Counted from the first letter of the stretch, positions 1,974-30,295 are shown. The stretch is 64,000 nucleotides of DNA from IMGVR_UViG_3300033153_013547:62001-126000, one strand, 5' to 3'. Notes: generated by a model not told the origin, from the sequence alone. Made by a program: numbers and translations.

Positions 1974-2146
1974 GAATCAATGGATGAATTCTTGGATAAA
2001 AAAGGTAAATTAGGTGGTAAATCAGTAAATAGATCAATGGGGGGATGAATGGATGGATGAGTCAATGGATTCTTGAGTAAATTCTTCAATAAATCAATGG
2101 ATTCTTGGATGAATCAATGGATAAATCAATGGATAAATCAATGGAT
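1974..2146. repeat. cluster of ~7 short direct repeats, core TCAATGG(AT)
   Basis: Copies at ~1974, 2031, 2061, 2091, 2111, 2123, 2135; the last three are tandem at 12-bp period. Confidence 0.7.
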
Positions 2147-2275
2147 TCTGCTGTAAAAAAGGACTCATAGCAGCCTCTCTCAATCCATTCATTTCCTCAT
2201 TTTCCCATTCCTGCCCATATTTTTCCCATTCTCACCCACTCTATCCCCTGTTTTACCCACAAATTGACATTATTT

Positions 2276-11744: not shown

Positions 11745-12051
11745 ACCTTATGGATGTCTTTTTGACTTAGAAAAGGCGGTCAGAAATAGAAGAACCTTTC
11801 TCTATCTCCCCCCACCTGGAGAATTGCAAAATTGTCAAAAAGCATCATTGTGTAAACTACAAGCAAGTAATGTGCTACTTATTCTTAGATTGTATCATAT
11901 TGTTCTTAGATTATGCCACATCCTGAACTCAAAGCAAAACAGGGGGCATAGACGTGTTGTATGTGCAGAAGGCGATGGTCTGCCGAAGGCAACACAATGT
12001 AATATTATCTATTAAAGTTGCCCTCAGCAGACCCATCAACATCAATCCAAG

Positions 12052-12222
12052 CTAATCACTTGGGAAAATGGGATACCGTGGATCATCCAGATCCTGGGGG
12101 GGGTCTTCCACTTCATAATGTGGACACCCATCACAATCTGGGCCTACGATATCCGTCAAGCCACACACCGACTCGTTGTCGGATAGGCTAAACCACAGAT
12201 GGACACAGGCCTCTTTTTCCAT
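12052..12222 (-). CDS. 56-aa acidic Cys-containing mini-protein, not in ORF track; last cassette of array
   Basis: AAGGAGG SD supplied by repeat R1; MEKEACVHLW...DDPRYPIFPSD. Confidence 0.7.
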   Translation of the reverse strand: MEKEACVHLWFSLSDNESVCGLTDIVGPDCDGCPHYEVEDPPQDLDDPRYPIFPSD

Positions 12223-12227
12223 CTCTT

Positions 12228-12307
12228 TCCTCCTTCAAGAAAGAATCACTATGCATTCATCATGGCACAATGTAGCTTCATGGCCACCAGCTACTCGGCC
12301 AAGCAGT
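12228..12307 (-). repeat. array repeat R1 (pseudoknot + P3 hairpin + SD)
   Basis: GGCCGAGTAGCTGGTGGCCATGAAGCTACATTGTGCCATGATGAATGCATAG...AAGGAGG. Confidence 0.9.
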
Positions 12308-12631
12308 TTAGTCACGAGGATCTATAACCCCTTCGATTTCATAGTCATCAACCTCTTCGATTTCACGGTCATTATTATAATCATACGAAACTTCATCGAT
12401 CCCCACCCTGAAGAGTGGGGATCCTCCACCACACGCGTCGAGGAACGCCATCTTTACCTGATGGGGATTTTGCCAATCATCATCAGGTTCGATGATCTTA
12501 ACCCCCCGTGTACTTGCAACAATACGGCCACCGATCTCATCAATGGCAAGAAACGCAGGCTTGCCATCATCGGTAACCGACATGAATGCCCCATATGTTA
12601 AATTGAAGTAGTTGTTAAAAAACAGATTCAT
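12308..12631 (-). CDS. acidic hypothetical protein ending DPRD
   Basis: 107 aa, between R2 and R1. Confidence 0.75.
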   Translation of the reverse strand: MNLFFNNYFNLTYGAFMSVTDDGKPAFLAIDEIGGRIVASTRGVKIIEPDDDWQNPHQVKMAFLDACGGGSPLFRVGIDEVSYDYNNDREIEEVDDYEIEGVIDPRD

Positions 12632-12731
12632 CTCTTCCTCCTTAGAAAGAAATCATCACACTTTCGTAGTGATCAAGTGATCGGATGATCACACGTAGCT
12701 TCATGGCCACCAGCTACTCGGCCACACAGCT
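12632..12731 (-). repeat. array repeat R2 (pseudoknot + alternative GTGATC hairpins + SD)
   Basis: Near-identical to R9; shares the pseudoknot with R1/R5/R7/R8. Confidence 0.9.
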
Positions 12732-12887
12732 TTAGTCACGAGGATCCAGATCCAACTCAGGATCCAGATCCAAGACATCAACATCAACCCCCCATCTGCA
12801 ATCTTGTTGATAAACAAGATCGCACTCTTCTCCCTCGGAAAGGAGGCAAGTTATGCCATCCTTCCCTAGGTATTTGCATTTTTTCAT
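12732..12887 (-). CDS. 51-aa acidic Cys-rich mini-protein ending DPRD (start revised)
   Basis: MKKCKYLGKDG...LDLDPRD; the longer ORF-track start reads through repeat R3. Confidence 0.7.
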   Translation of the reverse strand: MKKCKYLGKDGITCLLSEGEECDLVYQQDCRWGVDVDVLDLDPELDLDPRD

Positions 12888-12984
12888 TTTTCTTCTCCCT
12901 TGCCCCAAAGCACAACTCTTTGGGGCAAATCGCCATGCATTCATCATGGCACAATGCAGCCACAGTGCTAACGGCTGCTCAGCT
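12888..12984 (-). repeat. array repeat R3 (pseudoknot + P3 + P4 + SD)
   Basis: GCTGAGCAGCCGTTAGCACTGTGGCTGCATTGTGCCATGATGAATGCATGGCGATTTGCCCCAAAGAGTTGTGCTTTGGGGC. Confidence 0.9.
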
Positions 12985-12990
12985 AAAATG

Positions 12991-13956
12991 TTAAACAGGC
13001 ACAATCGAGTCGCTTCCTGCCTGCAACCTGCGCCTGTTTCCCAACACGATCCCCTCTTTCGTGTTGGCGTAGCAGTAACTGCAAAGGTGTGGGCAGGTGT
13101 TATATTGCCCGATGTCTTTGCTGGCAGCGCATCCGCAGATGCGCCGCTGCCCTGAATCTTTCAGTCCGGCTGGAGTGCCGAAAAGTTTCAGCAGTGCCGG
13201 ATCATTATTTGAGATTCGGAGCAACAGCTCGTCATCGATACATTTGTTTGGCTCGATGCTTGGTTGCTGAAGATCGAGCGGCTCGGCGCAAGTCGCCAAT
13301 TTTAGCCCCCATTGCTGATTCAATCTTACCAAACCTGAAGCTGTCTCACGCATTAAAAATGGTGTGAAATCGAGCCATTTGACGCCCTTTGCCTTTAGGT
13401 TGTTTCGGACTTTACCATAAGCGTCCATATAACTGAAAACCAACTTTTCCGTATATGGATGCAATTGGTCGCCCACTCGTTTAACCTTTTCGAGAAGTCG
13501 CTCAACATTGAGCTCTTCTGTTAAGATTAGAGGATCGAAACGCCAAATCACTCTATGCTTGCCAAGACGGTTGGACAACTCTTGGAATGATTGAATGCGC
13601 GACTCCAGAGGCGGCACATTCGGTTCCAACGCGCCGCCATGGTCTGCGACATAGTCGTTGACCGTGAACTGGAAATAGTAGGCGACGCCTACTTGATCCA
13701 GCTTTTTAAGGTGTTTCATCAAGGGTTTTGGATTCTTACTCCAAAAAACGATGGCGCGCATACGCTCAAAGGAAACAAACTGGGATTTCCCATTAAAAGG
13801 ATTAACCCAGCGTGAATAGCCTTCTTCGAGTCGTCGCATAAACCAATCAGAATAAAAGGCTGGAATATCGGTAGATCGACTAGCCGATATAACTTCCGGC
13901 GCCACAGCCGTATGCACTCCACTGGATGTGGAGATTTCAGTTCTTTTCCACCTCAT
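12991..13956 (-). CDS. DUF1848 family protein (radical-SAM-like, C-terminal Cys cluster)
   Basis: ISASRSTDIPAFYSDWF, FWSKNP, WRFDP, CGCAASKDIGQYNTCPHLCSYCYAN. Confidence 0.88.
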   Translation of the reverse strand: MRWKRTEISTSSGVHTAVAPEVISASRSTDIPAFYSDWFMRRLEEGYSRWVNPFNGKSQFVSFERMRAIVFWSKNPKPLMKHLKKLDQVGVAYYFQFTVNDYVADHGGALEPNVPPLESRIQSFQELSNRLGKHRVIWRFDPLILTEELNVERLLEKVKRVGDQLHPYTEKLVFSYMDAYGKVRNNLKAKGVKWLDFTPFLMRETASGLVRLNQQWGLKLATCAEPLDLQQPSIEPNKCIDDELLLRISNNDPALLKLFGTPAGLKDSGQRRICGCAASKDIGQYNTCPHLCSYCYANTKEGIVLGNRRRLQAGSDSIVPV

Positions 13957-14050
13957 CTACTCTCCCTACCCCAAAGCACAACTCTTTGGGGCAAATCGCC
14001 ATGCATTCATCATGGCACAATGCAACTTCATTGCTATCAGTTGCTCAGCT
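13957..14050 (-). repeat. array repeat R4
   Basis: Same architecture; S2 stem variant GCAACT/AGTTGC. Confidence 0.9.
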
Positions 14051-14057
14051 AATTAAT

Positions 14058-14582
14058 TCACCAATTCTGTTGAACAAACGCCACAATGGCGTCAAAGGTG
14101 TTTAGATCAACATCTTTGACGCCATTGTTGCCAATGATGGTCAACGGAATCCCCAGGCCAAGGGCAATCCTTATCCCCTGGCCTGTACCACCAAGGCCCC
14201 GTTTGTTAGACGGAGCAGCAATTACAGAATCACAACCAAAAATGATTCTGTAATTCCTTCCGTGCAACTTCCTTGCCCCCATAGACAAATATCCTGGGGC
14301 AGGATGATATTTGTCAACGGAAGCAAAGGCCGCCTGGTCGCTCATGGACAAAACATGAACGACCTTGCAAAGGCCCTGGATTTGAGAATTGTACGACGGC
14401 CACGGCACATGACCTTCAGTACTTATTCCCAAATTTCTGGCATGCTCGATGGCAACTTTGTCAATACCATCAGCGCAGCCAGAGACAACTACAGACCCTT
14501 TATCAAGAGATTCTACAATCTCTCTGACAATGCGGATCTGGGGACCAGAGGGGTCTCTGGTCCCTATCACAGCAATCTTCAT
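14058..14582 (-). CDS. SLOG superfamily (DprA/Smf-like) nucleotide-binding protein
   Basis: IAVIGTR, VVSGCADGID, GGTGQGIRIALGLGIP. Confidence 0.75.
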   Translation of the reverse strand: MKIAVIGTRDPSGPQIRIVREIVESLDKGSVVVSGCADGIDKVAIEHARNLGISTEGHVPWPSYNSQIQGLCKVVHVLSMSDQAAFASVDKYHPAPGYLSMGARKLHGRNYRIIFGCDSVIAAPSNKRGLGGTGQGIRIALGLGIPLTIIGNNGVKDVDLNTFDAIVAFVQQNW

Positions 14583-14666
14583 TCCTTTTCTCCTTCAAAA
14601 AAGAATCGCCATGCATTCATCATGGCACAATGTAGCTTCATGGCCATCAGCTACTCGGCCAGGCAG
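14583..14666 (-). repeat. array repeat R5 (no P4)
   Basis: Close match to R1. Confidence 0.9.
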
Positions 14667-14673
14667 ACAATTG

Positions 14674-14934
14674 TTAATGAACAATCACTCCATCTTTCAC
14701 CCTTCTTAGGGCAAAGATGAAGTCATCGCCTTGCATATAGACGATGACCTTTACATCCGAGGTGTCGAAACACTCTATACTGGTCTCGACAAATTTTAAG
14801 GGATCGTTAAGGTACGCATCAGCGTCATTAACATCCAGCACCCATGTGCCGGTTATCGGGAGCCTAAACGCCTCCCGAATGATAACATGTGATCCCGGAC
14901 TTGCCGGGATCGTGGGGTATATAATTCTCCTCAT
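14674..14934 (-). CDS. hypothetical protein (start revised to MRRIIYP)
   Basis: AAGGAG SD of R6. Confidence 0.65.
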   Translation of the reverse strand: MRRIIYPTIPASPGSHVIIREAFRLPITGTWVLDVNDADAYLNDPLKFVETSIECFDTSDVKVIVYMQGDDFIFALRRVKDGVIVH

Positions 14935-14940
14935 CCCCAT

Positions 14941-15032
14941 CTCCTTTGCCCCAAAGCACAACTCTTTGGGGTAAAATCGCCATGTATTCATCATGGCACA
15001 ATGTAGCCTTATGACTATCGGCTGCTCAGTCA
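14941..15032 (-). repeat. array repeat R6
   Basis: S1 variant GACTG/TAGTC. Confidence 0.9.
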
Positions 15033-15039
15033 AGAGAAC

Positions 15040-15423
15040 TTAGGCAGAATCTCTGATCTTCATCAGGATCCTGCCCAGATGGTTCAGTCCAACTCCGTTG
15101 CTTACGCCCCAGAATTGGTCTCCCCACCAATTCTCTTCAACGATCTCCCCCTTTATGGCCTGAAGTTTGGCCATAAAGACAGGATCGCTGAACTTTTTAC
15201 TTACCAGATCCTCCATGATCTGGAGTTTGACCTGATCCCAGTCAGGCCTAAGCCTAACTGTTTTGCCAATCTTTTTGGCAATAAACCCGTTGGTCACACC
15301 AACGAATCTTGCCTGATCAGCAGGATCAGTACACTTTGCCTTCTGGTACTCCACCTCCACACAGTACCCTAACGAATTAGGACACATGTTGGACAGAAAC
15401 CAGAAGATGCCCCTGAATCTCAT
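15040..15423 (-). CDS. NADAR (YbiA-like) ADP-ribose/N-glycosidase
   Basis: FLSN, VEYQKAK, RPDWDQVKLQIM, KF, IVEENWWGDQFWG, GLNHLGRILMKIR; AAGGAGG SD. Confidence 0.9.
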   Translation of the reverse strand: MRFRGIFWFLSNMCPNSLGYCVEVEYQKAKCTDPADQARFVGVTNGFIAKKIGKTVRLRPDWDQVKLQIMEDLVSKKFSDPVFMAKLQAIKGEIVEENWWGDQFWGVSNGVGLNHLGRILMKIRDSA

Positions 15424-15433
15424 AATCACCTCC

Positions 15434-15847
15434 TTAGTGATATATCTCAACATTCAGATCAAGATCAGCCAGTTTATCAGACATCATCTGCCTAACCACT
15501 GGCCAATCCAGACCTCCAAGGCCACATCCAAGCCTGGGGAAGGCTATGGACCTAAAACTCCAGGTTTGGGTGGCAAAATCATCAAGACCATCAGAGATAT
15601 ACTCCAATTTGCTTGGATCTCTCCAATGATCCTTGGTGGGGAACAGTAGAACATTCTCCACCAAGATGACCTTGCCAGGCCTTAGAATGCCTGCAGAGCA
15701 TAGCCTGGCATACTCTGCAAACACCATGGGAAACCTTGCTTTGAACTCCAAGGCAAGACCCTTGCCCATCACGCCAACACAGTTGACGGGATTGACAAGA
15801 ACCTCACATTTGGAATCAAACAGATCCCCCCGCAGCAACAACAACAT
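15434..15847 (-). CDS. macrodomain ADP-ribosylhydrolase (DarG/Poa1/TARG1-like class)
   Basis: GDLF, VNPVNCVGVMGKGLALEFK, FPTKDHW, SIAFPRLGCGLGGLDW. Confidence 0.9.
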   Translation of the reverse strand: MLLLLRGDLFDSKCEVLVNPVNCVGVMGKGLALEFKARFPMVFAEYARLCSAGILRPGKVILVENVLLFPTKDHWRDPSKLEYISDGLDDFATQTWSFRSIAFPRLGCGLGGLDWPVVRQMMSDKLADLDLNVEIYH

Positions 15848-15951
15848 CTCCTCCTCCTTTACCCCAAAGCACAACTCTTTGGGGTAAAATCGCCATGTAT
15901 TCATCATGGCACAATGTAGCTTCATGGCCACCAGCTACTCGGCCAAGCAGT
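15848..15951 (-). repeat. array repeat R7
   Basis: GGCCG-type pseudoknot + P3 + P4. Confidence 0.9.
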
Positions 15952-16155
15952 TTAATCACGAGGATATCTGATGACATCATTCATGGTATCATGGTCAATA
16001 TCAGCAGATATCGTCTTGATTGCTTCCAACTTGATGAAAGCGCACAGAAGTCCCCGCACTTCTTCGATTTCATCAAATAAAATCTTGCTCCGATGAAAGA
16101 GCAAGACTATCGTCACCACAAGGGCGGCGATAATAATCGACATTAATAACAACAT
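15952..16155 (-). CDS. 67-aa membrane-anchored protein ending YPRD (start revised)
   Basis: MLLLMSIIIAALVVTIVLLF hydrophobic N-term; SD from R8. Confidence 0.7.
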   Translation of the reverse strand: MLLLMSIIIAALVVTIVLLFHRSKILFDEIEEVRGLLCAFIKLEAIKTISADIDHDTMNDVIRYPRD

Positions 16156-16258
16156 CTCCTCCTCCTTTACCCCAAAGCACAACTCTTTGGAGCAAAATCG
16201 CCATGTATTCATCATGGCACAATGCAGCTTCATGGCCACCAGCTACTCGGCCAAGCAG
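16156..16258 (-). repeat. array repeat R8
   Basis: Near-identical to R7. Confidence 0.9.
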
Positions 16259-16561
16259 TTACTTCTTCTGCTTTTCAACCCATTCCTTTATCACGTCTCC
16301 GTGACAAGGGCTGGGTTTGCAAAAGCAGACAAGGGTCTTCCCATCAAGTTCAAGCACCCTCCTCTTGAACTCGGGGTCAGACCCCAATCTGCTCAGGAAG
16401 TACTCCCTATACTTAGGTAGGGAGCTACCCCCTGAGCCGGGGAATGGATTCCCAAAATATCCATCCATTCCCCTACCAGCCCTTCCTATGTAAACATAGG
16501 AAGGGTCATCGCGCCACCCCTTAGGGGCGTCGCGAATATTAATAACGTTGATAGGCAACAA
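16259..16561 (-). CDS. DUF4326 family protein
   Basis: YVYIGR...FGNPF...LDGKTLVCFCKPSPCHGDVI; AAGGAGG SD favours TTG at 16561 (ORF track start 16594). Confidence 0.85.
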   Translation of the reverse strand: MLPINVINIRDAPKGWRDDPSYVYIGRAGRGMDGYFGNPFPGSGGSSLPKYREYFLSRLGSDPEFKRRVLELDGKTLVCFCKPSPCHGDVIKEWVEKQKK

Positions 16562-16629
16562 AATCACCTCCTTTTGTTGCCGGTCAATCGACACGGTTTC
16601 GGCAGACCACGTGTCATTCTGCAGACAAA

Positions 16630-17070
16630 TTACATGAAATCTCCCACAATCAGGTCACCCTTCTTGTGGGAGATTTTCTTCCCCCTTGGTCGGGGCGCAG
16701 GCACCTTCTTGGCGGGCACCTTCTTGGCAGGTGCCTTAACCTCTCTGGGCCACTTGCAATAATGCTTGACTGGCCCAGAGGCAGGCCGCTCTGCTGTTGC
16801 TGCCACCACTTCCACAGCAACAGCCTTTTTCACAGTAGGCCCAACCACATCATGGATGAGCCTACTGCAACACAGCTGCTTCCTGAGACGAAGTATTGCC
16901 TCGCCTCCGTCCACGCCTGTGGGGATCGTGCCCCTCCAACCGGGAACACGTTCCCCGTTGAGGTAGGCTTCACAGTACTGAAGCCCACCCCTTTCAAACA
17001 GGGGGGAGAATTTAATCTTTACCCTCTTCCCCCCCAACAAAATGTCAGGGGGACGAATCAAATTAGGCAC
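16630..17070 (-). CDS. hypothetical protein with basic PAKK tail
   Basis: AAGGAG SD, GTG start; KAPAKKVPAKKVPAP repeat. Confidence 0.65.
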   Translation of the reverse strand: MPNLIRPPDILLGGKRVKIKFSPLFERGGLQYCEAYLNGERVPGWRGTIPTGVDGGEAILRLRKQLCCSRLIHDVVGPTVKKAVAVEVVAATAERPASGPVKHYCKWPREVKAPAKKVPAKKVPAPRPRGKKISHKKGDLIVGDFM

Positions 17071-17143
17071 AGTAACACACTCCTTTCTGCCAGGTATATC
17101 CTGGATCAGATGAGCAGTTTATTGTCTTGCTCAGGACACAATG

Positions 17144-17464
17144 TTATAAACCAAGTTCCTCCCTGACACGATCCCTATTGACGGGATAAATGTTTATCTC
17201 ATCTATCCCATCAATAGAAACCCTGAACAATTGCCAGGGGCCCCCATCTGCTGGGATGAACCAGTATAGAGGATTATACCCCTTGGCTTCCTCAAACTCC
17301 TTCGCTGCTCTTCCGAACAGCGAATTCTTCCGGGGATTTTGTTGCCAAACTTCTCCCCAAATCTGCCCTATTGGCTTGGCAGATTTGAGCATCACCCCAG
17401 AAATGGTGGCTCTTGGTGCGGAGCAGACCGCCTTACGCACCAAGGCAATAATTTTCTCTTCCAT
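17144..17464 (-). CDS. hypothetical protein
   Basis: SD from R9. Confidence 0.75.
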   Translation of the reverse strand: MEEKIIALVRKAVCSAPRATISGVMLKSAKPIGQIWGEVWQQNPRKNSLFGRAAKEFEEAKGYNPLYWFIPADGGPWQLFRVSIDGIDEINIYPVNRDRVREELGL

Positions 17465-17562
17465 TTTTCCTCCTTAGAAAGAAATCATCACACTTTCGTA
17501 GTGATCAAGTGATCGGATGATCACGCGTAGCTTCATGGCCATCAGCTACTCGGCCATACAGT
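17465..17562 (-). repeat. array repeat R9 (R2 type)
   Basis: Near-identical to 12632-12731. Confidence 0.9.
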
Positions 17563-17645
17563 TTAGTCACGAGGGTCCAGAATGTCACCATGGCTTGTTG
17601 TCAGCCAGAAATGGCTTTCAACCCATAGACCAATGCCCCAACTGA

Positions 17646-18611
17646 CTAAATTCCCCGTGCCCAGAGAGCGTTCCGGCGCGCTTCTTTTTCGGCGCGCGCC
17701 TTTTCAACTCGTTCGCGAAGCTCCGGGGGAACATAGCCCGGCGTGTCGGGCGGTTCCGTAGCAGACACCGTAAATGTCTGCAGGAAAACGCTCGCGTACT
17801 CTTCCACCTGTTCGAGGGACAGCTCGACCCCCGAACGCAGCTCTTTGGGCAACTGGTAATCCAGATCAACTTCCACCACTCTCTCGGCGTGAACCGCGAT
17901 GTGTGGCGGGAGGCTGCCTTGCGTGGTATAAACGTCCTTCCCCATCACGTCATCCACTGCGGCATTCTCCACGACTGGCGTTCCCTTTGTCACCAGTCCT
18001 ATTTTCTCCAGATACGTCACGAACGCCGGATGGCGCGTGACGATGATGTTCCCATTTTCCATGGGAACAATATCCGACGCCCTGAGCAAATCTGACGCGA
18101 TGAAAGAGTACGCCTTGAGCTCACCGCTCGCGTACTCTTCCACCTGTTCAAGGGTCAGTTCGACCCCAGAACGCAGTTCATCGGGTAAATCGAGCGTGAG
18201 CTCGATTAACTTTTCTGAATACACCGCCAAGTGCAGGGGAATATACCCCTGCGTGGTGTAAACAGACCTTAAGGGACCGAGAGGTATCCCCGTCATGTCA
18301 TGACGGCTCCGCACATTCTTGAGCCACGTCACACGCCGTGCGCTGCCGAATGTGTGGATCTTCGCAAAATAACGCGCCACTGCGAGGTGGCGCGAAACGA
18401 CAAGATCTTTCGGCGGATAAATCTCCACTAGTCGGACAACGCGCGACTCGCCCTCCTCCAGGTAATTCCCGTAGGAATCCTGGACGGAACCCGAGGCTAT
18501 CGTCGTTCGATAGCCGTGCTCGATATCTATGGGGCCGCACCGGCGACCCTTGAAGTCCCTGATTTTCTCAAGCCTAGCCTCATTCCAGGCTTGAAACTCC
18601 TTCTCATTCAT
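17646..18611 (-). CDS. tandem two-domain Csx16-like (Cas_VVA1548) putative ring nuclease
   Basis: Two repeats of VV(S/T)RH...G(Y/S)(I/L)PxH(L/I)A...LPxELRSGVEL(T/S)LEQVEEYA. Confidence 0.7.
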   Translation of the reverse strand: MNEKEFQAWNEARLEKIRDFKGRRCGPIDIEHGYRTTIASGSVQDSYGNYLEEGESRVVRLVEIYPPKDLVVSRHLAVARYFAKIHTFGSARRVTWLKNVRSRHDMTGIPLGPLRSVYTTQGYIPLHLAVYSEKLIELTLDLPDELRSGVELTLEQVEEYASGELKAYSFIASDLLRASDIVPMENGNIIVTRHPAFVTYLEKIGLVTKGTPVVENAAVDDVMGKDVYTTQGSLPPHIAVHAERVVEVDLDYQLPKELRSGVELSLEQVEEYASVFLQTFTVSATEPPDTPGYVPPELRERVEKARAEKEARRNALWARGI

Positions 18612-18668
18612 ATCAATCTCTCCTTGCCCTGCACTAGCCGCGGCAGGGCTTCGCGGTTGTGTGTTACC

Positions 18669-18953
18669 CTATGCAAACTGCACGATGTACGCCACGGGCG
18701 TGCTGGCGTATTCGCGCACTTGCTCAAGGGTCAGCTCGACCCCCCTCATCTCCGCCGGAATATCCAGCGGAACTTCGATCACTCGCCGCGCATGCACGGC
18801 GAGCCGAAGAGGAAGAACGCCGAAAACGTTCTTCCCCATTACATCGTCGACCGTGGCATGTGCCACGATGGGCGTGCCTTCCGGCACTAACCCTATCTCG
18901 ATCAAATACGTCACCAATGCTGGGTGACGCGTAACAACAATACTTTTATTCAT
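18669..18953 (-). CDS. csx16: Csx16-like (Cas_VVA1548) putative cOA ring nuclease, 94 aa (start revised)
   Basis: IVVTRHPA...GVLPLRLA...LDIPAEMRGVELTLEQV fits the Csx16 pattern hhsRHpgA...GtLPxhLA...LdlPxexRGxELs. Confidence 0.75.
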   Translation of the reverse strand: MNKSIVVTRHPALVTYLIEIGLVPEGTPIVAHATVDDVMGKNVFGVLPLRLAVHARRVIEVPLDIPAEMRGVELTLEQVREYASTPVAYIVQFA

Positions 18954-19048
18954 CTCTTCTCCTTTACCCCAAAGCACAACTCTTTGGGGCAAATCGCCAT
19001 GTATTCATCATGGCACAATGCAGCCACAGTGCTGTCGGCTACTCAGCT
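18954..19048 (-). repeat. array repeat R10
   Basis: Same architecture as R3. Confidence 0.9.
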
Positions 19049-19086
19049 GTGGGGGGCGATCCTGTTTCGATGTTGACAGGATCCAT

Positions 19087-19117
19087 AAAAAAAGAGAGAG
19101 GCCCGAAGGCCCCTCTC
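19087..19117 (-). terminator. rho-independent terminator (copy 1)
   Basis: GAGAGGGGCC-TTCG-GGCCTCTCTC + T7. Confidence 0.85.
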
Positions 19118-19120
19118 CGA

Positions 19121-19210
19121 TGATGCCTATATTTCTCCTTTCCCGGCATCAGGGAGTTTCACCACTATGCAGGTGACGCATACATTTTGTTTATCCAGAT
19201 GTAAACTGGA
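19121..19210 (-). ncRNA. candidate structured RNA, three tandem H-type pseudoknots (copy 1)
   Basis: TCCAG/CTGGA + TACAT/ATGTA; TGC/GCA + TCACC/GGTGA; TCCC/GGGA + TGATGCC/GGCATCA; covaries with copy 2. Confidence 0.55.
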
Positions 19211-19234
19211 ATCCGGTTTTGAAAGGGGAGGGGG

Positions 19235-19690
19235 TTACTCTATTATTGGGAGGACATCCCCTTCTTCAAAGTCATACTGCCACGGATCATAATCCGTGGC
19301 AAGACCAATTGCTGTGACCATGTCTTTTGCGACGATCACAGCAAACCCCTGAAATTCCTCGCCCCCATCGTAGGGGACGAGGAACCCCCCGGGTTCCTTT
19401 TCTTCCGGACACTCCGGAAGGTTGGGGGCAAGTTTTCTTGCCCCCAACTGAAGGGTCCTCCAGACGGAGGTTTTTACTCCGTCTAGAAACCCTGACTCCC
19501 CACGTAAAATGGGGTAAAACACGCTAGTCGCTGCAGCGGCCAGCGTGCTCGCTCCTCCGGCTCTCATGAGCCGGAAGTACGAAATATTGCCGCTAACAGC
19601 AACTGGGCACCACGTCCTGTGGAGGGGCAGACACTGCCCATACCCCTCCACAGGGCGTAAAAAGACCGATAGCCAAAAAATTTTAGCCAT
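19235..19690 (-). CDS. hypothetical protein, paralog of 19972..20442 (start revised)
   Basis: MAKIFWLSV...FRLMRAGGA...LVPYDGGE. Confidence 0.75.
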   Translation of the reverse strand: MAKIFWLSVFLRPVEGYGQCLPLHRTWCPVAVSGNISYFRLMRAGGASTLAAAATSVFYPILRGESGFLDGVKTSVWRTLQLGARKLAPNLPECPEEKEPGGFLVPYDGGEEFQGFAVIVAKDMVTAIGLATDYDPWQYDFEEGDVLPIIE

Positions 19691-19696
19691 TCCCAT

Positions 19697-19787
19697 CTCC
19701 CTTACCCCAAAGCACAACTCTTTGGGGTAAAATCGCCATGTATTCATCATGGCACAATGCAACCACAGTGCTAACGGCTGCTCAGCT
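19697..19787 (-). repeat. array repeat R11
   Basis: Same architecture as R3. Confidence 0.9.
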
Positions 19788-19825
19788 GTGGGGGGCGATC
19801 CTGTCTCGATGTTGACAGGATCCAT

Positions 19826-19857
19826 AAAAAAAAGAGAGAGGCCCGAAGGCCTCTCTC
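19826..19857 (-). terminator. rho-independent terminator (copy 2)
   Basis: GAGAGAGGCC-TTCG-GGCCTCTCTC + T8. Confidence 0.85.
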
Positions 19858-19860
19858 CGG

Positions 19861-19952
19861 TGATACCTATATTTCTCCTTTCCCGGTATCAGGGAGTTTC
19901 ACCACTATGCAGGTGACGCATACATTTTGTTTATCCAGATGTAAAAACTGGA
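19861..19952 (-). ncRNA. candidate structured RNA, three tandem pseudoknots (copy 2)
   Basis: TGATACC/GGTATCA compensatory change; a 2-nt insertion falls in a loop. Confidence 0.55.
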
Positions 19953-19971
19953 ATCCGATTTTGAAAAGGGG

Positions 19972-20442
19972 TTACCCTATTATCGGGATAATATCCCGAT
20001 AATCCGTAGCAAAGTCGTCTCGCCACAGATCGTAATCTATGGCGAGATCAATCGCCGTGGTCGCATTTTTTGCGACTACGACGACAAACCCCTCGAATTC
20101 GCCCCCATCGTAGGGGACGAGCACTTTGCAGAATACCCCGGAACGTTCCGGGATATCGGGGGCAAGCAAAGCTACCCCCACCTGCATTGTTCTCCGGACA
20201 AATGTTACCCACTTGTCTAGAGAATTTACCTCGCTCAAGAGCCAATCCGCATTTGTTAAAATGGGATAAAATATACTAGCCACTATAGCGGTTAGTATAT
20301 CCGCTCCTCCGGCTCTCATGAGCCGGAAGTGCGAAACGCCGTCGCTTTCAGCGACGACGTTCCATGACTCATTATCGGGGGGGTTTTCTTTAAACCCCTC
20401 GATCTTGTCGAGTAAAACTGACAGCCAAAAGATCTTGGCCAT
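19972..20442 (-). CDS. hypothetical protein, paralog of 19235..19690 (start revised)
   Basis: Shared motifs; SD from R12. Confidence 0.75.
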   Translation of the reverse strand: MAKIFWLSVLLDKIEGFKENPPDNESWNVVAESDGVSHFRLMRAGGADILTAIVASIFYPILTNADWLLSEVNSLDKWVTFVRRTMQVGVALLAPDIPERSGVFCKVLVPYDGGEFEGFVVVVAKNATTAIDLAIDYDLWRDDFATDYRDIIPIIG

Positions 20443-20537
20443 CTCCTCCTCCTTTGCCCCAAAGCACAACTCTTTGGGGCAAATCGCCATGTATTCATCA
20501 TGGCACAATGCAACTTCATTGCTATCAGTTGCTCAGC
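20443..20537 (-). repeat. array repeat R12
   Basis: R4-type pseudoknot + P3 + P4 + AAGGAGGAGG. Confidence 0.9.
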
Positions 20538-20628
20538 GTCATATCGCAGATTTCCTAACCGGTGTCTGCCAACCGGCCACAGCCAAAATAGTGACTGTGG
20601 CCACCGCCTACGTTGCGGAGGCGGTGGT

Positions 20629-20835
20629 TTAAAACCCCCGAGCCTCAAGGTCGAGGCATATGTCTTCGTATGCCTCGACCTTGAGCTCGTCAGCAAGGGA
20701 ATCTAAATAACTCCCTTGCTGAACGTTGAGGCGTTCTACCTTGCGGCAGAACGCCTCAACAAGCTCAAGGCGACGATAAGGATTCTTGCAATCCTTAATC
20801 GCCTCCTTGAGCTTAAACAACTCAAGAAATCTCAT
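20629..20835 (-). CDS. 68-aa hypothetical protein, first gene of array (start revised)
   Basis: AAGGAGG SD before MRFLELF. Confidence 0.7.
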   Translation of the reverse strand: MRFLELFKLKEAIKDCKNPYRRLELVEAFCRKVERLNVQQGSYLDSLADELKVEAYEDICLDLEARGF

Positions 20836-21342
20836 AAACACCTCCTTCAACGACATAGGGCATCTATTTATACCCCTCTTTGGCCCTATCACAGAATTGT
20901 GTCCATCTTCGACCAGATGGAAGAATTACTCCCTTAGGCCATATAGTTTGGGGGTGGGCATCATCTGATAACTCCACCCCTAAACTATCATTCTGGTCAG
21001 CCCCCCAAAATTCATCACAGAATTGCCTTATAAACAGACAAAAAAATTGCCTCATGAACAAACAACATTCTTCATAGCTAGCTAGATAAAAACTAACTTT
21101 CAGTCAGTCTTCCAAAATTCACAAATTTACTCCTTCATTGAATGATCCATATACTATAAAAACTTTTTCTCAAACAACTTCTCAAAAAATATATGCAGTA
21201 ATAATTCCCATGTAAGGGCTAAAATAAAATCTCTCTCTGGCCTCCAAAATAAAATAATTATTATCTAATAAGGTAGTATAGATGGGTAGATGGGTAGATA
21301 TCCTGCCTTATTTACTAAAATAGGATTTACTTTTAATTAATT

Positions 21343-24014: not shown

Positions 24015-24953
24015 ATGCATGAATTGTGCCATTTGCAGTTAGATCCACTATACAATAACAAAGAAGTAGATCCACAAGAAATAGGTATAAGCAAAAATCA
24101 ATTTGAGAACCTAAAGTACAATGAATATTGTATCTTGAGCAATGGAGAATCTAATAGTGCAATAGCCTATAAAACAATCAAAGACACAATTAAGATTGCC
24201 AAACTTCCCAAAACTCTATCAATAAAAGCAAAATATGCTGAACATACCGCAGCTATTCATGCCATATTATACAATAATGATGTCAAGATCGTGATCCTCC
24301 ATGGCGTAGCTGGAGGAGGAAAATCTTACATATCTCTTGGTTGCGGTCTTCATGCCACAGTCGTTGCTAAAAAGCCACAATACAAGAAAATGCTATTGAT
24401 TAGAAACAATGTACCGGCATCCACATATTCCCTAGGACTATTGCCTGGAGAACTACACGAAAAGATGACCCCATGGTTTGGTCCAGCGGACGATATTTTA
24501 GAAGAACTATTATTGCTGCCAAGCCTCAAATCATGTGGATTGTATGCAGAAACCTCTGGTCAGCAACAAATTCCTGCCACTAGATTACTTACAAATAGCG
24601 GTCTATTAACAATAAGTACATCAGAATATCTTAGAGGAGCATCAAAAAAAGATACATATGTAATCGTTGATGACTTCCAAAACTTCACCAAAACAGAAAC
24701 AGATCTGATAATGACGAGATTTGGCCAGGGCTGTAAACTCGTGTTGTGTGGAGATCCTTCCCAAGTAGACAACAAGCAAACAAATGCCACCAACTCTGGC
24801 ATGGAATTAGTTCAAAATATGCGTCGATTAGACAATAATTTTGAAAAAGCCACAGCATCTATAGAATTCTTACACAGCGAATGTCGCGGGCCAATCGTCA
24901 AATTGTATATTGCTGCTAAAAGAAAAGTAACACAACACAGCACTCGTCACTAA
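24015..24953 (+). CDS. phoH: PhoH family ATPase
   Basis: GVAGGGKS, LGLLPGELHEKMTPW, YLRGAS, IVDDFQN, TRFGQGCKLVLCGDPSQVD. Confidence 0.9.
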   Translation: MHELCHLQLDPLYNNKEVDPQEIGISKNQFENLKYNEYCILSNGESNSAIAYKTIKDTIKIAKLPKTLSIKAKYAEHTAAIHAILYNNDVKIVILHGVAGGGKSYISLGCGLHATVVAKKPQYKKMLLIRNNVPASTYSLGLLPGELHEKMTPWFGPADDILEELLLLPSLKSCGLYAETSGQQQIPATRLLTNSGLLTISTSEYLRGASKKDTYVIVDDFQNFTKTETDLIMTRFGQGCKLVLCGDPSQVDNKQTNATNSGMELVQNMRRLDNNFEKATASIEFLHSECRGPIVKLYIAAKRKVTQHSTRH

Positions 24954-27073: not shown

Positions 27074-27604
27074 ATGCCAGACATAAAAGAATATACAAGT
27101 ATTGATCCTAATGTAAAGTTTTTGGGTGCTGCTACTGTGCACTCTTTTACTAGTATAGATGGAGATGTAGTGATTGGAGACAATACCACAATATGGCAAT
27201 CTACAAATATTGCAGGCAAAGTTTCCGTAGGCTCAAATTGTGTAATTGGTTCTCAGTGCTCAATTCTGGGCACCAAGATGCCCACAATCATTGGCAAACA
27301 TGTTCGTATGCAGTCTCATTGTTTTATTCCTGATGGCACAGTAATTGGAGACAACACCTTTCTTGCCCCTGGGGTTACGATTTTGAACGATAAATATCCC
27401 CCATCATCCAGTCACAAAGATTGGAGTCCCGTAACAATCGAAAATGGGGCACGTATAGGCGGAGGAGTAGTCATTTTACCCGGCGTCACCATTGGCAAGG
27501 GTGCTCTGGTGGGGGCAGGTTCGGTTGTGACCAAGGACGTTATTCCCAACTCTGTGGTCAAAGGAAGCCCAGCAAGGATTTGGGTGATACCATCCCTTGA
27601 ATAA
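27074..27604 (+). CDS. hexapeptide-repeat sugar N-acetyltransferase (WbpD/WlbB-like)
   Basis: Left-handed beta-helix repeats; NDKYP; [29 protein letters not shown]. Confidence 0.88.
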
Positions 27605-28439
27605 TAAAACATTTGCCATATCTGGATTGGGTAGCATATCCCCACGTCATTTGGAAGCCGTGAAGCATATTGGGGGCATCATTCTTGACGTACATGATCC
27701 TGATTGGAGCAAATCATATTTTTATGGAAGGCAGGCAGTCTTTCACAAATCCATTGAAAGCATGCTTGAAAAATCAGAAGCAGAATGGTTTGTCATTTTG
27801 TCTCCCAGTAAATACCACTTTTCTCAATCTATGAAAGCCCTGGATCTGGGCAAGAAAGTTATAGTAGAAAAACCTGCTGCTATGACTCTATATGACGTTC
27901 TACAATATTCTGGACGAGAAATCTATACCGTATCACAACTACGATATCTCGACGACATTATCAACATCAAAAATAAAATATCTACAGGTCACCATGATGT
28001 AAACATCAAGATCATAGCACACAGGCATCCCATAACCATGGCAAACTGGAGACATGACATAAATTGGTCTGGTGGGCTAATGTATTTCGTAGGCATTCAT
28101 TACATAGACTTAGTCACTTGGTTGTTTGGCAAGATGGAAAAATTAGAACAAGTTACTTGGCTAAACAAACAAAAGTGCCAATTTAGTATGGAGTTAGAAA
28201 GAGCCACAGTCAATGCCAGCTTTGAAATTACTGAAACCCAACCAAACCACAAGAGCATGATCATAGATGATATAGAAATAGATTTGGCTGCCAAGTTTTA
28301 TGATTTACATTGTTATTTATATGAAGATATAATGGCAGGACATGGCATTCATCCAATGGATGTATATCATACTATGGAGATTATTCATAAGATTAATGGC
28401 TATGCCAATGAAGGATATGGCTACAATGCTTCTAAATAA
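27597..28439 (+). CDS. Gfo/Idh/MocA oxidoreductase (WbpB/WlbA-like)
   Basis: [33 protein letters not shown]. Confidence 0.85.
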
Positions 28440-29389: not shown

Positions 29390-29398
29390 TTGTGTCTC

Positions 29399-30280: not shown

Positions 30281-30295
30281 TATTGTTTTCTCCTA

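What the first reader, a model, noticed from the sequence alone, without database searches (positions are those of the whole stretch)
12263..20537. The repeat's 5' module is a covarying H-type pseudoknot on the mRNA strand
Seen on the minus strand: S1-A-S2-(2-3 nt)-S1'-(4-5 nt)-S2'. S1 varies as GGCCG/TGGCC (R1,2,5,7,8,9), GCTG/TAGC or CAGC (R3,4,10,11,12) and GACTG/TAGTC (R6). S2 varies as GTAGCT/AGCTAC, GCAGCC/GGCTGC and GCAACT/AGTTGC. Both stems show compensatory changes, and most non-canonical pairs are G-U on the sense strand (R6 has one C-A mismatch), which points to RNA rather than DNA function. A 6-bp S2 crossed by a single A is the geometry of the T2/T4 gene 32 pseudoknot. Inference: nuclease roadblock, processing signal, translational enhancer or protein-binding site.
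Basis: partly seen in the sequence, partly recalled or inferred. Interest (0 to 1): 0.85.

Follow-up and report, generated by a model that had tools for sequence, protein, structure and literature searches.

The report
Repeated pseudoknot between phage accessory genes
Twelve copies of a 29-base RNA element that can fold into a small pseudoknot sit between the gene modules of an anti-defence-looking operon in an uncultured jumbo phage. Compensating mutations show that the fold is under selection, but what it does is still only inferred.

Summary
Twelve copies of a 29-nt module lie at 12272-20538, all on the minus (mRNA) strand, and nowhere else in the window. All follow one ungapped layout: S1 (5 nt), A, S2 (6 nt), 2 nt, S1', 4 nt, S2'. 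About 94-95% of pair cells are standard pairs, five pairs show changes on both sides, and sliding the partners drops pairing to 14-59%. Every substitution in the six varying pairs (pair 1-19 aside) is a transition. Wobble pairs fall on the mRNA strand, which pairs 93.9% against 84.8% for the opposite strand.

An RNA H-type pseudoknot is therefore well supported, with three limits. There are only four sequence classes. No relative exists in any collection searched. S1 is weaker than S2: its outer pair is absent in 5 copies.

The module is the 5' end of a roughly 100-nt intercistronic cassette: stop codon, 6-8 nt, pseudoknot, invariant hairpin, 12-bp hairpin, Shine-Dalgarno, ATG. The cassettes separate modules encoding Csx16, Macro+NADAR, DUF4326, DUF1848 and others.

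It matches no Rfam family. It has no sigma-70 promoter, no recoding signal, and is not a gene 32 operator. My best guess, which is inferred, is a shape-dependent boundary or stability element of a modular, recombining leader cassette. It is a new variant of phage intergenic regulatory cassettes.

The parts
20443..20538 (-). Cassette R12. Pseudoknot 20510-20538 (class C: S1 GCUG/UAGC, S2 GCAACU/AGUUGC). Then hairpin 2, hairpin 3 and the SD, ahead of the ATG at 20442. First cassette of the array, 91 nt after the upstream stop.
19691..19787 (-). Cassette R11. Pseudoknot 19759-19787 (class B, with a G.U in S2). Then hairpin 2, hairpin 3 and the SD, ahead of the ATG at 19690. Preceded by an intrinsic terminator and a small hairpin.
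18954..19048 (-). Cassette R10. Pseudoknot 19020-19048 (class B; S1 GCUG/CAGC, the only copy with G-C at pair 5-15; U.G in S2). Then hairpin 2, hairpin 3 and the SD, ahead of the ATG at 18953 (Csx16-like gene).
17465..17555 (-). Cassette R9. Pseudoknot 17527-17555 (class A), followed by the alternative leader: two small hairpins and an SD paired with an upstream UUCUUUC. ATG at 17464. The 22-nt class-A 5' extension is present here as an ORF-less remnant ending in TAA.
   Evidence: (D6, D12)
16156..16252 (-). Cassette R8. Pseudoknot 16224-16252 (class A with U.G in S2), 6 nt after the DUF4326 stop. Then hairpin 2, hairpin 3 and the SD, ahead of the ATG at 16155.
15848..15944 (-). Cassette R7. 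Pseudoknot 15916-15944 (class A), 7 nt after the upstream stop. Then hairpin 2, hairpin 3 and the SD, ahead of the ATG at 15847 (Macro, followed by NADAR).
14941..15031 (-). Cassette R6. Pseudoknot 15003-15031 (class D: S1 GACUG/UAGUC, S2 with one C.A mismatch), 8 nt after the NADAR stop. Then hairpin 2, hairpin 3 and the SD, ahead of the ATG at 14940.
14583..14660 (-). Cassette R5. Pseudoknot 14632-14660 (class A), 13 nt after the upstream stop. Then hairpin 2 and no hairpin 3. ATG at 14582 (DprA/SLOG-like gene).
13957..14050 (-). Cassette R4. Pseudoknot 14022-14050 (class C), 8 nt after a TGA stop. Then hairpin 2, hairpin 3 and the SD, ahead of the ATG at 13956 (DUF1848).
12888..12984 (-). 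Cassette R3. Pseudoknot 12956-12984 (class B: S1 GCUG/UAGC, S2 GCAGCC/GGCUGC, extendable to 7 bp by a G.U), 7 nt after the DUF1848 stop. Then hairpin 2, hairpin 3 and the SD, ahead of the ATG at 12887.
12632..12723 (-). Cassette R2. Pseudoknot 12695-12723 (class A), 8 nt after the upstream stop, followed by the alternative leader as in R9. ATG at 12631.
   Evidence: (D6)
12223..12300 (-). Cassette R1. Pseudoknot 12272-12300 (class A), 7 nt after the upstream stop. Then hairpin 2 with a mutated 3' arm and an SD-sequestering hairpin. ATG at 12222.
19833..19858 (-). Intrinsic-terminator-like hairpin (11 bp plus a U tract) after gene g2, upstream of cassette R11.
19093..19118 (-). Intrinsic-terminator-like hairpin (11 bp plus a U tract) after gene g3, upstream of cassette R10.

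Best explanation
The 29-nt module is a real RNA structure, a compact H-type pseudoknot. S1 has 4-5 bp, loop 1 is a single invariant A, S2 has 6-7 bp, there are 1-2 junction nt, and loop 3 has 4-5 nt. It forms on the polycistronic mRNA of a minus-strand accessory operon in a 261-kb uncultured jumbo phage.

It is the 5' boundary module of a repeated intercistronic leader cassette. The order is: upstream stop, a 6-8 nt pyrimidine-rich spacer, the pseudoknot, an AUUGU linker, a sequence-invariant 7-bp hairpin, a 12-bp hairpin ending at the SD, then the ATG.

Shown:
- The repeats and the pairing pattern.
- The compensatory changes and the strand bias.
- The modular cassette anatomy.
- Confinement to this one array.

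Inferred: selection acts on the shape, not the sequence. I therefore propose that the pseudoknot is a shape-dependent barrier at the edge of each gene module.
- It would stay folded next to a terminating ribosome, because it starts just outside the ribosome's footprint.
- It would block exonucleolytic decay. That could be 5'-to-3' decay by an RNase J-type enzyme if the host is a Firmicute, or 3'-to-5' decay of the upstream cistron after cleavage in a linker.
- Together with the two hairpins, it would give every acquired gene the same insulated, stable translation-initiation region.

Being repeated, the cassettes also serve as homology for module shuffling.

My confidence that the pseudoknot is a selected RNA structure is about 0.75. 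My confidence in the barrier/insulator role specifically is about 0.35. The single confidence figure given for this explanation (0.45) is a compromise between the two.
For: Copies and pairing:
- Twelve copies, minus strand only, none elsewhere in the window.
- Ungapped alignment with 94-95% of cells paired, 5 pairs changed on both sides, 0/500 shuffles as good, and slid partners at 14-59%.
- All 11 variable columns within pairs 2-18, 4-16, 5-15, 8-28, 10-26 and 12-24 vary by transitions. Three of the four variable unpaired columns show transversions (read).
- Pairing is 93.9% on the mRNA strand and 84.8% on the opposite strand.

Energetics and fold:
- The two hairpins are nearly isoenergetic in class A (-7.0 and -6.2 kcal/mol). 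A rough pseudoknot estimate of -6.7 to -14.1 beats the nested minimum free energy of -4.8 to -10.0 in every copy.
- The consensus nested fold of the cassette contains only S2, hairpin 2 and hairpin 3. No conserved competitor uses the S1 strands.
- Whole cassettes fold better than shuffles, with z about -3.1 to -3.5 in 4 of 6 tested.

Position and modularity:
- The spacing from the stop codon to the first S1 pair is 6, 7, 7, 7, 8, 8, 8 and 13 nt in the 8 copies that directly follow an ORF.
- The pseudoknot occurs with two unrelated leaders. Pseudoknot classes combine freely with the G/A variant of the hairpin-2 loop, so it is a separate module.
- In the tandem duplicate, intergenic parts are 93-97% identical while coding parts are 73-76% identical (D3/D5 against D8/D9). 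The cassettes are therefore either conserved or homogenised.

Host:
- The portal protein is 25-27% identical to those of Bacillus jumbo phages of the 0305phi8-36 group and of a Moorella phage, and the SDs are strong (AAGGAGG). Both fit a Firmicute-type host, which would have RNase J and RNase Y (the link to those enzymes is my own knowledge).
Against: - There are only four sequence classes, so there are few independent events: at least 5 compensated double changes, 4 changes to wobble or improved pairs, and 1 disruptive change.
- No homologous element exists in any searched collection to add independent evidence.
- S1 is weak in classes B and C (3 Watson-Crick pairs plus a G.U), and its outer pair is missing in 5 copies.
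- Covariation cannot show that both helices form at the same time.
- The energy estimate uses a generic pseudoknot penalty, not a proper pseudoknot folding program.
- No transcript ends, nuclease data or host are known, so the barrier role is pure inference.
- Four copies are 90-187 nt from the preceding stop, so proximity to the stop is not universal.
- The short spacing could simply reflect genome compaction, or the repeat carrying its own stop codon (class A).
Confidence: 0.45

Rival explanations
1. Protein-binding operator. The pseudoknot, alone or with the invariant hairpin 2, is bound by a phage or host protein. That protein would co-regulate translation or stability of all modules that carry the cassette, in the manner of gp32, RegA or coat-protein operators.
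For: - The same leader precedes 12 unrelated gene modules, as expected for a regulon.
- Hairpin 2 is identical in stem and loop in 9 of its 10 copies apart from one loop purine; R1 carries a mutated 3' arm. That suggests sequence-specific recognition.
- A6, G13 and U21 of the pseudoknot are invariant.
Against: - The pseudoknot stems differ at up to 6 of 11 pairs between classes, and the loops vary too, so few bases are left for specific contacts.
- No RNA-binding protein is identifiable in the array by Pfam.
- A gene 32-type mechanism needs an unstructured tract downstream, which is absent here.
Confidence: 0.2
2. Recombination scaffold only. The cassettes are PeSL-like repeated homology that mediates shuffling, duplication and deletion of gene modules. 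On this view the pseudoknot has no function of its own.
For: - The cassettes are mosaic. R1 matches R7 in its 5' half and R5 in its 3' half. Pseudoknot class and the hairpin-2 loop variant occur in all combinations.
- There is a tandem duplicate of gene plus terminator plus cassette.
- An ORF-less remnant of the class-A 5' extension lies at 17562-17584.
- Three unrelated ORFs share a PRD-stop ending that is supplied by the repeat.
- The array has a different G+C content, 47-53% against 35-45% elsewhere in the window.
Against: - Homology-driven recombination needs no base pairing. It does not explain five compensated pairs, transition-only change in the stems, or wobble pairs confined to one strand.
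- This explanation is compatible with the best explanation as a second role.
Confidence: 0.15
3. Recoding stimulator. The pseudoknot, 6-8 nt after the stop codon, promotes stop-codon readthrough or frameshifting of the upstream gene, or stalls the terminating ribosome.
For: - Spacing of 6-8 nt in 7 of the 8 copies that follow an ORF. By my own knowledge, this is the distance used by frameshift and readthrough pseudoknots.
- The NADAR stop is in frame with the next ORF through cassette R6.
Against: - Readthrough would add only 2-9 residues in R1, R3, R4 and R7, and the extensions are not conserved (read).
- No X XXY YYZ heptamer lies upstream.
- Four copies are 90-187 nt from the preceding stop.
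- The frame relation to the downstream gene is inconsistent among copies.
Confidence: 0.05
4. Catalytic or ligand-sensing RNA. The pseudoknot, with hairpin 2, is a self-cleaving ribozyme or a riboswitch aptamer that processes or gates each cistron.
For: - It is a compact pseudoknot followed by hairpins just upstream of an SD.
- Two leader types have an open or a sequestered SD.
Against: - There is no match to any of 4227 Rfam families, even at E up to 10. These include pistol, twister, hatchet, HDV-like, preQ1, SAM-II and guanidine-III.
- Few unpaired nucleotides are conserved.
- The order of strands does not fit pistol, which has P2 between P1 and the 3' pseudoknot strand (my own knowledge).
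Confidence: 0.05
5. Single-stranded DNA structure. The interleaved inverted repeats fold in one DNA strand as a site for a recombinase or transposase, by the logic of integron attC sites, IS200/IS605 ends or REP/RAYT.
For: - It is an array of co-oriented gene cassettes separated by structured, strand-specific repeats.
- G.T wobble pairs are tolerated in folded DNA as well (my own knowledge).
Against: - Over the roughly 9 kb either side of the array that was covered (window about 9970-30490), no gene has a recombinase, integrase or transposase Pfam hit on record.
- The cassette is three local structures, not one long imperfect hairpin with R''/R' cores.
- The element always lies in the mRNA sense and at a fixed distance from the SD.
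Confidence: 0.05
6. Processive antitermination signal. The cassette RNA modifies RNA polymerase in the manner of HK022 put, so that it reads through the internal terminators of the array.
For: - Two strong intrinsic terminators lie inside the array, at 19858-19833 and 19118-19093.
- No sigma-70-like promoter follows them.
- Cassette R12 lies upstream of both terminators.
Against: - Ten further copies lie downstream of the last strong terminator.
- There is no similarity to put or EAR in Rfam.
- A phage-specific promoter cannot be excluded.
Confidence: 0.05

Closest known systems
PeSL cassettes (promoter-early stem-loop) of T4-type phages (PMC2839356, PMC4122927)
   Same: - Short, conserved, repeated intergenic cassettes that run from the stop codon of one gene to the SD and start of the next.
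- Concentrated in a variable accessory region.
- They carry a stable stem-loop with G-T pairs.
- Mosaic patterns and duplications point to recombination between copies.
   Different: - PeSLs are defined by a strong sigma-70 promoter plus a terminator-like stem-loop. Here no sigma-70-like promoter is found in any cassette, and the hairpins lack U tracts.
- PeSLs have no pseudoknot and no reported covariation.
- This phage is not T4-like.
Autoregulatory pseudoknot of the T2/T4/T6 gene 32 mRNA (Holland et al. 1999, cited in PMC5684407; geometry from my own knowledge)
   Same: A compact H-type pseudoknot in a phage mRNA leader. A single adenosine in loop 1 crosses a 6-7-bp stem 2, and the two stems have similar stability.
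   Different: - Gene 32 has one copy per genome, at the 5' end of an unstructured A/U-rich operator that gp32 coats.
- Its stems stack coaxially without junction nucleotides, and its loop 2 has 7 nt.
- Here there are 12 copies, 1-2 junction nt, a 4-5-nt loop 3, two stable hairpins downstream, and no SSB gene.
RNase III processing sites of T7 early and late mRNAs, and of Bacillus phage SP82 early mRNA (my own knowledge)
   Same: Repeated, structured intercistronic elements in phage polycistronic transcripts. They define segment ends and stabilise the flanking mRNAs.
   Different: Those sites are long irregular hairpins of about two helical turns. Here the helices are 5-12 bp and the 5' one is a pseudoknot. 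No cleavage data exist.
REP/BIME elements of enterobacteria (my own knowledge; Liang, Rudd and Deutscher 2015 for the effect of closeness to the stop codon)
   Same: Transcribed, repeated, structured elements in intergenic regions of operons. They act as exonuclease barriers, and when close to a stop codon they affect the terminating ribosome.
   Different: REPs are simple imperfect palindromes, occur in both orientations, number in the hundreds, and are linked to RAYT transposases. This element is a pseudoknot, is in one orientation only, and is confined to one operon.
Start-associated sequences (SAS/ESAS) of Cluster K mycobacteriophages (PMC3203893)
   Same: Conserved repeats placed just upstream of the translation starts of a subset of phage genes. 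Some have an added inverted repeat. Their function is still unknown.
   Different: A SAS is a 13-bp motif at the ribosome-binding site, and an ESAS is a 17-bp inverted repeat. Neither has a pseudoknot, and they are scattered over the genome rather than forming one array.

Membership tests
Gene 32-type autoregulatory pseudoknot operator | H-type pseudoknot with a single-nucleotide loop 1 crossing a 6-7-bp stem 2 | tested here: met
   Invariant A6 lies between S1 and a 6-bp S2 (7 bp in class B). Both helices covary.
Gene 32-type autoregulatory pseudoknot operator | The pseudoknot nucleates cooperative binding along an unstructured A/U-rich tract that reaches the ribosome-binding site | tested here: not met
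   The 49-68 nt between the pseudoknot and the ATG hold stable helices. In 8 copies these are two conserved hairpins of 7 bp and 12 bp.
Gene 32-type autoregulatory pseudoknot operator | The regulated gene encodes the single-stranded-DNA-binding protein that binds its own leader | tested here: not met
   The 12 downstream genes differ from one another. Pfam finds Csx16, Macro, DprA/SLOG, DUF1848 or nothing, and no SSB.
PeSL regulatory cassette | Strong sigma-70-type promoter inside the repeat | tested here: not met
   None of the 13 promoter-like sites in 11800-21200 falls in the conserved part of a cassette, and the total is not above shuffles. A phage-specific promoter cannot be tested.
PeSL regulatory cassette | Stem-loop acting as a terminator or attenuator | tested here: inconclusive
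   Hairpin 2 is flagged as weakly terminator-like in 2 copies only. Hairpin 3 is followed by AAGGAGG, not by U residues.
PeSL regulatory cassette | Repeated between stop and SD/start in a variable accessory region, with signs of exchange between copies | tested here: met
   No comparison with a sister genome was possible, because the only other contig is 100% identical.
Recoding (frameshift or readthrough) pseudoknot | Pseudoknot 5-9 nt downstream of the recoding site | tested here: met
   6-8 nt after the stop in 7 of the 8 copies that follow an ORF.
Recoding (frameshift or readthrough) pseudoknot | A slippery heptamer, or a conserved extended reading frame beyond the stop | tested here: not met
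   No X XXY YYZ motif is present. Readthrough extensions are 2-9 codons in R1, R3, R4 and R7 and are not conserved (read).
Known pseudoknotted ribozymes and riboswitches (pistol, twister, HDV-like, preQ1, SAM-II, guanidine-III and others) | Match to the family covariance model | tested here: not met
   No hit at the gathering score over the whole window. At E up to 10, no hit to a ribozyme or riboswitch family and none aligned to a cassette over 11800-21200.
Integron attC site | A single long imperfect hairpin with R''/R' core sites, and an adjacent intI gene | tested here: not met
   The cassette folds as three local structures. No recombinase Pfam hit is on record over window about 9970-30490, roughly 9 kb beyond each end of the array. 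The rest of the 261-kb genome was not examined.

The most novel reading that the evidence does not exclude
The pseudoknot is a new class of phage boundary RNA: a small, mechanically directional plug that resists an exoribonuclease (an RNase J-type enzyme) or an incoming ribosome. Together with the invariant hairpin, it would turn each acquired anti-defence gene module into an autonomous, portable expression cassette. That would amount to a natural RNA insulator and a gene-cassette system with integron-like logic that works without an integrase.
Probability: 0.2. Interest if true: 0.75.

Novelty: new variant of a known kind. Interest (0 to 1): 0.55.

Why it matters
Repeated intergenic cassettes are known to organise the variable regions of some phages, but those are promoter/terminator units.

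Here the repeated unit is an RNA leader whose first module is a pseudoknot kept by compensatory evolution within a single genome. It separates genes that look like counter-defence functions: a cA4 ring-nuclease family (Csx16), Macro plus NADAR for ADP-ribose removal, DUF4326, SLOG and DUF1848.

If the element sets mRNA boundaries or stability, three things would follow:
- It would show how a jumbo phage plugs foreign genes of different composition into a uniform expression context.
- It would add a compact structured RNA motif that is absent from Rfam.
- It could serve as a natural insulator part for operon design.

If it is only a by-product of recombination, it is still a clean example of cassette-mediated shuffling outside the T4 group.

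Tried and rejected
1. Searching for relatives to gain independent covariation.
- Exact and degenerate motif scans of viral contigs returned only the source contig.
- The hairpin-2 motif gave nothing in metagenome or genome contigs.
- A degenerate pseudoknot pattern gave one hit in each of those collections. Both lie inside the same ABC-permease gene of an Acetobacteraceae bacterium and are chance matches.
- Protein routes also failed. The paralogous pair g2/g3 and the flanking 404-aa gene have no relatives beyond the phage itself.
- The only other contig, from JGI sample 3300033148, is 100% identical over 10,125 bp.

2. Rfam, at the gathering score and at E up to 10, gave nothing relevant.

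3. tRNA/tmRNA search found none.

4. Megablast against known phages found no match.

5. A coding reading of the cassette is rejected. Some frames are open through it, but the frame relative to the downstream ATG differs among copies, and gene callers merely over-extended some ORFs.

6. A dsDNA operator reading is rejected. The half-sites differ between copies while staying complementary to each other, and the two inverted repeats interleave.

7. The idea that S1 lost a base pair by paired deletions is rejected, because the alignment is ungapped.

8. Looking up the gene 32 pseudoknot geometry in the held library failed. That comparison rests on my own knowledge.

Full report
WHAT IS THERE

Reading the minus strand of 12000-21000 shows a run of about 17 small-to-medium genes, all on the minus strand. 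They are separated at 12 places by a conserved intergenic repeat.

All are on the minus strand, at 12272-12300, 12695-12723, 12956-12984, 14022-14050, 14632-14660, 15003-15031, 15916-15944, 16224-16252, 17527-17555, 19020-19048, 19759-19787 and 20510-20538. I call these R1 to R12.

A covariance model built from them scores the 12 at 36.7-46.5 bits. Nothing else in the 64-kb window scores above 7.8 bits. No comparable repeat family exists in the rest of the window.

THE PAIRING PATTERN

The 12 copies align without a single gap. The layout is always S1 (columns 1-5), A (6), S2 (7-12), two nucleotides (13-14), S1' (15-19), four nucleotides (20-23), S2' (24-29).

One detail differs. The shorter S1 of R3, 4, 10, 11 and 12 is not a pair lost by deletion. 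It is a mismatch (A.A or C.A) at the outermost pair 1-19.

Counting the proposed pseudoknot on the alignment gives these results:
- 94-95% of cells are standard pairs (S2 98%, S1 89%).
- Five of 11 pairs are changed on both sides: 2-18, 4-16, 8-28, 10-26 and 12-24.
- No shuffle out of 500 reaches the observed pairing or covariation score.
- Pairing falls to 14-59% when the 3' partners are slid by one to three columns.

Read, all 11 variable columns inside pairs 2-18, 4-16, 5-15, 8-28, 10-26 and 12-24 vary by transitions. That is the route through wobble intermediates. Three of the four variable unpaired columns (14, 20, 23) show transversions.

The single changes that are not compensated land on wobble pairs or improve a pair:
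- U.G in R8 and in R10.
- G.U in R11.
- G.U to G-C at pair 5-15 in R10.

The one disruptive change is C.A in R6.

HOW STRONG IS THIS?

The copies fall into four sequence classes: A (six copies), B (three), C (two) and D (one). The number of independent events is therefore small. I count at least five compensated double substitutions.

The shuffle control does not correct for relatedness, but the slide control does, and it is clear.

A single copy would prove nothing. Windows that satisfy this exact geometry occur about 8.6 times per shuffled window, both strands counted. The case rests on covariation.

S2 is solid. S1 is weaker, with two compensated pairs, a nearly constant closing G.U, and an outer pair present in only seven copies.

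STRAND, AND RNA VERSUS DNA

The same structure counted on the plus strand pairs at 84.8%, against 93.9% on the minus strand. For S1 the figures are 73.3% against 88.9%. The wobble pairs therefore sit on the mRNA-sense strand.

Most of this asymmetry comes from one column pair (5-15). As independent evidence it amounts to about four events against two.

Three further observations favour a transcript over folded DNA, though folded DNA of the same strand is not formally excluded:
- The copies have the same orientation as the genes.
- The pseudoknot's distance to the start codon is fixed for each leader type, at 49-68 nt.
- The stems change only by transitions.

Interleaved inverted repeats whose half-sites differ between copies do not fit a double-stranded operator.

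GEOMETRY AND ENERGY

A single nucleotide can cross the deep groove of a 6-7-bp stem 2, and four to five nucleotides can cross the shallow groove of a 4-5-bp stem 1. These are the classical rules for H-type pseudoknots, which I cite from my own knowledge. They were not modelled here.

In class A the two hairpins are almost isoenergetic, at -7.0 and -6.2 kcal/mol. A rough estimate (stacking of both stems plus a 9.6 kcal/mol pseudoknot penalty) gives -6.7 to -14.1 kcal/mol. That is lower than the best nested fold (-4.8 to -10.0) in all 12 copies.

In whole-cassette folds, identical class-A sequences use S1 in some contexts and S2 in others, as expected if neither hairpin alone is decisive.

The consensus nested fold of eight full cassettes contains only S2, hairpin 2 and hairpin 3. 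Nothing conserved competes for the S1 strands.

CONTEXT

The module is the first part of a cassette with a fixed order. The upstream stop codon comes first, then a pyrimidine-rich spacer of 6, 7, 7, 7, 8, 8, 8 or 13 nt. Next come the pseudoknot and the linker AUUGU. They are followed by a 7-bp hairpin with a 7-nt loop, identical in 9 of its 10 copies apart from one loop purine (R1 has a mutated 3' arm). Last come a 12-bp hairpin that ends at the Shine-Dalgarno sequence (8 copies) and the ATG.

Leader variants:
- R2 and R9 carry the same pseudoknot on a different leader.
- R1 and R5 lack hairpin 3.
- In R1 and R2 the fold pairs the SD with an upstream pyrimidine run. R9 and R5 carry the same or a similar pyrimidine tract.

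Pseudoknot class and the G/A variant of the hairpin-2 loop occur in all combinations. The pseudoknot is therefore a separable module, and the cassettes are mosaic.

In class A the repeat extends 22 nt upstream, across the stop codon. As a result, three unrelated small ORFs end in the same PRD-stop. A fourth copy of this extension is an ORF-less remnant.

R10 and R11 follow strong intrinsic terminators.

In the tandem duplicate g2/g3, the intergenic parts are 93-97% identical while the coding parts are 73-76% identical.

GENES AND PHAGE

The modules between cassettes encode:
- Two Csx16-family proteins. Csx16 is a cA4 ring nuclease (bioRxiv 10.1101/2024.09.24.614671).
- DUF4326.
- Macro followed by NADAR.
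- A DprA/SLOG-like protein.
- DUF1848.
- Several orphan proteins.

This looks like a counter-defence island. Its G+C content is 47-53%, against 35-45% elsewhere in the window.

The window belongs to a 261-kb IMG/VR contig. Its portal protein is 25-27% identical to those of Bacillus jumbo phages of the 0305phi8-36 group and of a Moorella phage. Together with the strong SDs, this suggests a Firmicute-type host.

IS IT KNOWN, OR FOUND ELSEWHERE?

There is no Rfam match at the gathering score or at E up to 10. No tRNA-like gene is present, and there is no nucleotide match to known phages.

Every search for relatives failed. These covered three repeat motifs, the alternative-leader motif, a degenerate pseudoknot pattern, the flanking genes and the paralogous pair g2/g3. 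The searches returned only the source contig, an identical 10-kb contig from a sister sample, or chance hits inside a bacterial permease gene.

HOW IT MOST LIKELY WORKS

Selection keeps the shape of the pseudoknot while its sequence drifts. The adjacent hairpin, by contrast, is frozen in sequence. I therefore read the pseudoknot as a shape-dependent element and hairpin 2 as the sequence-specific one.

The pseudoknot always forms the 5' edge of the leader. Where an ORF precedes it, it begins 6-8 nt past the stop. By my own knowledge, that places it just outside the mRNA entry channel of a terminating ribosome, so it can stay folded while the upstream gene is translated.

My best guess is a boundary or barrier element. 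It would stop exonucleolytic decay at the module edge. That could be 5'-to-3' decay by an RNase J-type enzyme, or 3'-to-5' decay of the upstream cistron after a cut in a linker. It would also shield the uniform hairpin-SD unit from the upstream context. Every acquired module would then get the same stable, insulated initiation region. This is inference and no step of it is shown.

The repeats also clearly act as substrates for exchange, as the mosaics, the duplication and the remnant show. That does not explain the covariation, but it is compatible as a second role.

The rival explanations are a protein operator, recoding, a ribozyme or riboswitch, a DNA-level recombination site and put-like antitermination. 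They are weighed in their own sections. None is excluded outright.

COMPARISON WITH KNOWN SYSTEMS

- In organisation, the closest kind is the PeSL cassette of T4-type phages (PMC2839356, PMC4122927). It runs from stop to SD/start, is repeated in hyperplastic regions and mediates shuffling. Its defining sigma-70 promoter is absent here, and it has no pseudoknot.
- In shape, the closest is the gene 32 mRNA pseudoknot. Its operator context and its regulated gene are not matched.
- In proposed function, the closest are the repeated RNase III sites of T7 and SP82, and REP elements.
- SAS/ESAS repeats of Cluster K mycobacteriophages (PMC3203893) are another case of unexplained repeats next to start codons.

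VERDICT

The structural interpretation is well supported, within the limits of 12 related copies from one genome. The functional interpretation is open.

I rate it as a new variant of phage intergenic regulatory cassettes and of moderate interest. It is a clean, unannotated structured RNA motif in an interesting gene neighbourhood, but so far it is known from a single phage.

Noticed in passing
window 12052-20835, minus strand: The array looks like a counter-defence island. It holds two Csx16-family (cA4 ring nuclease) genes at 18669-18953 and 17646-18611, the second containing several Csx16-like repeats. It also holds DUF4326 (16259-16594), Macro (15434-15847) followed by NADAR (15040-15423), a DprA/SLOG-like gene (14058-14582), DUF1848 (12991-13956) and several orphan genes. 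G+C is 47-53%, against 35-45% in the rest of the window.
   Followed up: partly
window 19235-20442: Tandem duplication of a unit made of gene, intrinsic terminator, small hairpin and cassette (g2 and g3, 56% identical proteins with no relatives in any database searched). The intergenic parts are 93-97% identical and the coding parts only 73-76%, which points to homogenisation of, or stronger constraint on, the non-coding parts.
   Followed up: partly
window 12308-12329, 12732-12753, 15952-15973, 17562-17584: The class-A repeat extends about 22 nt upstream over the stop codon. Three unrelated small ORFs therefore share the ending PRD-stop. The fourth copy (17562-17584) has no ORF and looks like the remnant of a deleted gene.
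   Followed up: partly
window 12223-12250, 12632-12660, 14583-14610, 17465-17490: In the four cassettes without hairpin 3, an upstream pyrimidine run (UUCUUUC-like) faces the Shine-Dalgarno sequence. The folds of R1 and R2 pair the two; R5 and R9 were not folded. In the eight cassettes with hairpin 3 the SD lies just 3' of the stem. These may be two leader types with closed and open ribosome-binding sites.
   Followed up: partly
window 15040-15042 and 14674-15033: The TAA stop of the NADAR gene is in frame, through cassette R6, with the next ORF. This is probably chance, since the frame relations differ among cassettes. Automatic gene calls have over-extended several ORFs into the cassettes.
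   Followed up: partly
window 1951-2157: A dense block of short direct repeats, spaced 12 and 20 nt apart, with a unit resembling GATAAATCAATGG. It could be iteron-like or a repetitive coding stretch.
   Followed up: no
window about 27600-31500: A cluster of sugar-modification genes in a phage genome: PGA_cap, UDP-GlcNAc 2-epimerase family, GFO/IDH/MocA oxidoreductase and a hexapeptide transferase. A PhoH-like gene lies at 24015-24953.
   Followed up: no
window 41225-44446: A 1073-aa ribonucleotide reductase homologue whose PHROG match covers mainly residues 679-1065. The long N-terminal part is unexplained and could be an extra domain or an insertion.
   Followed up: no
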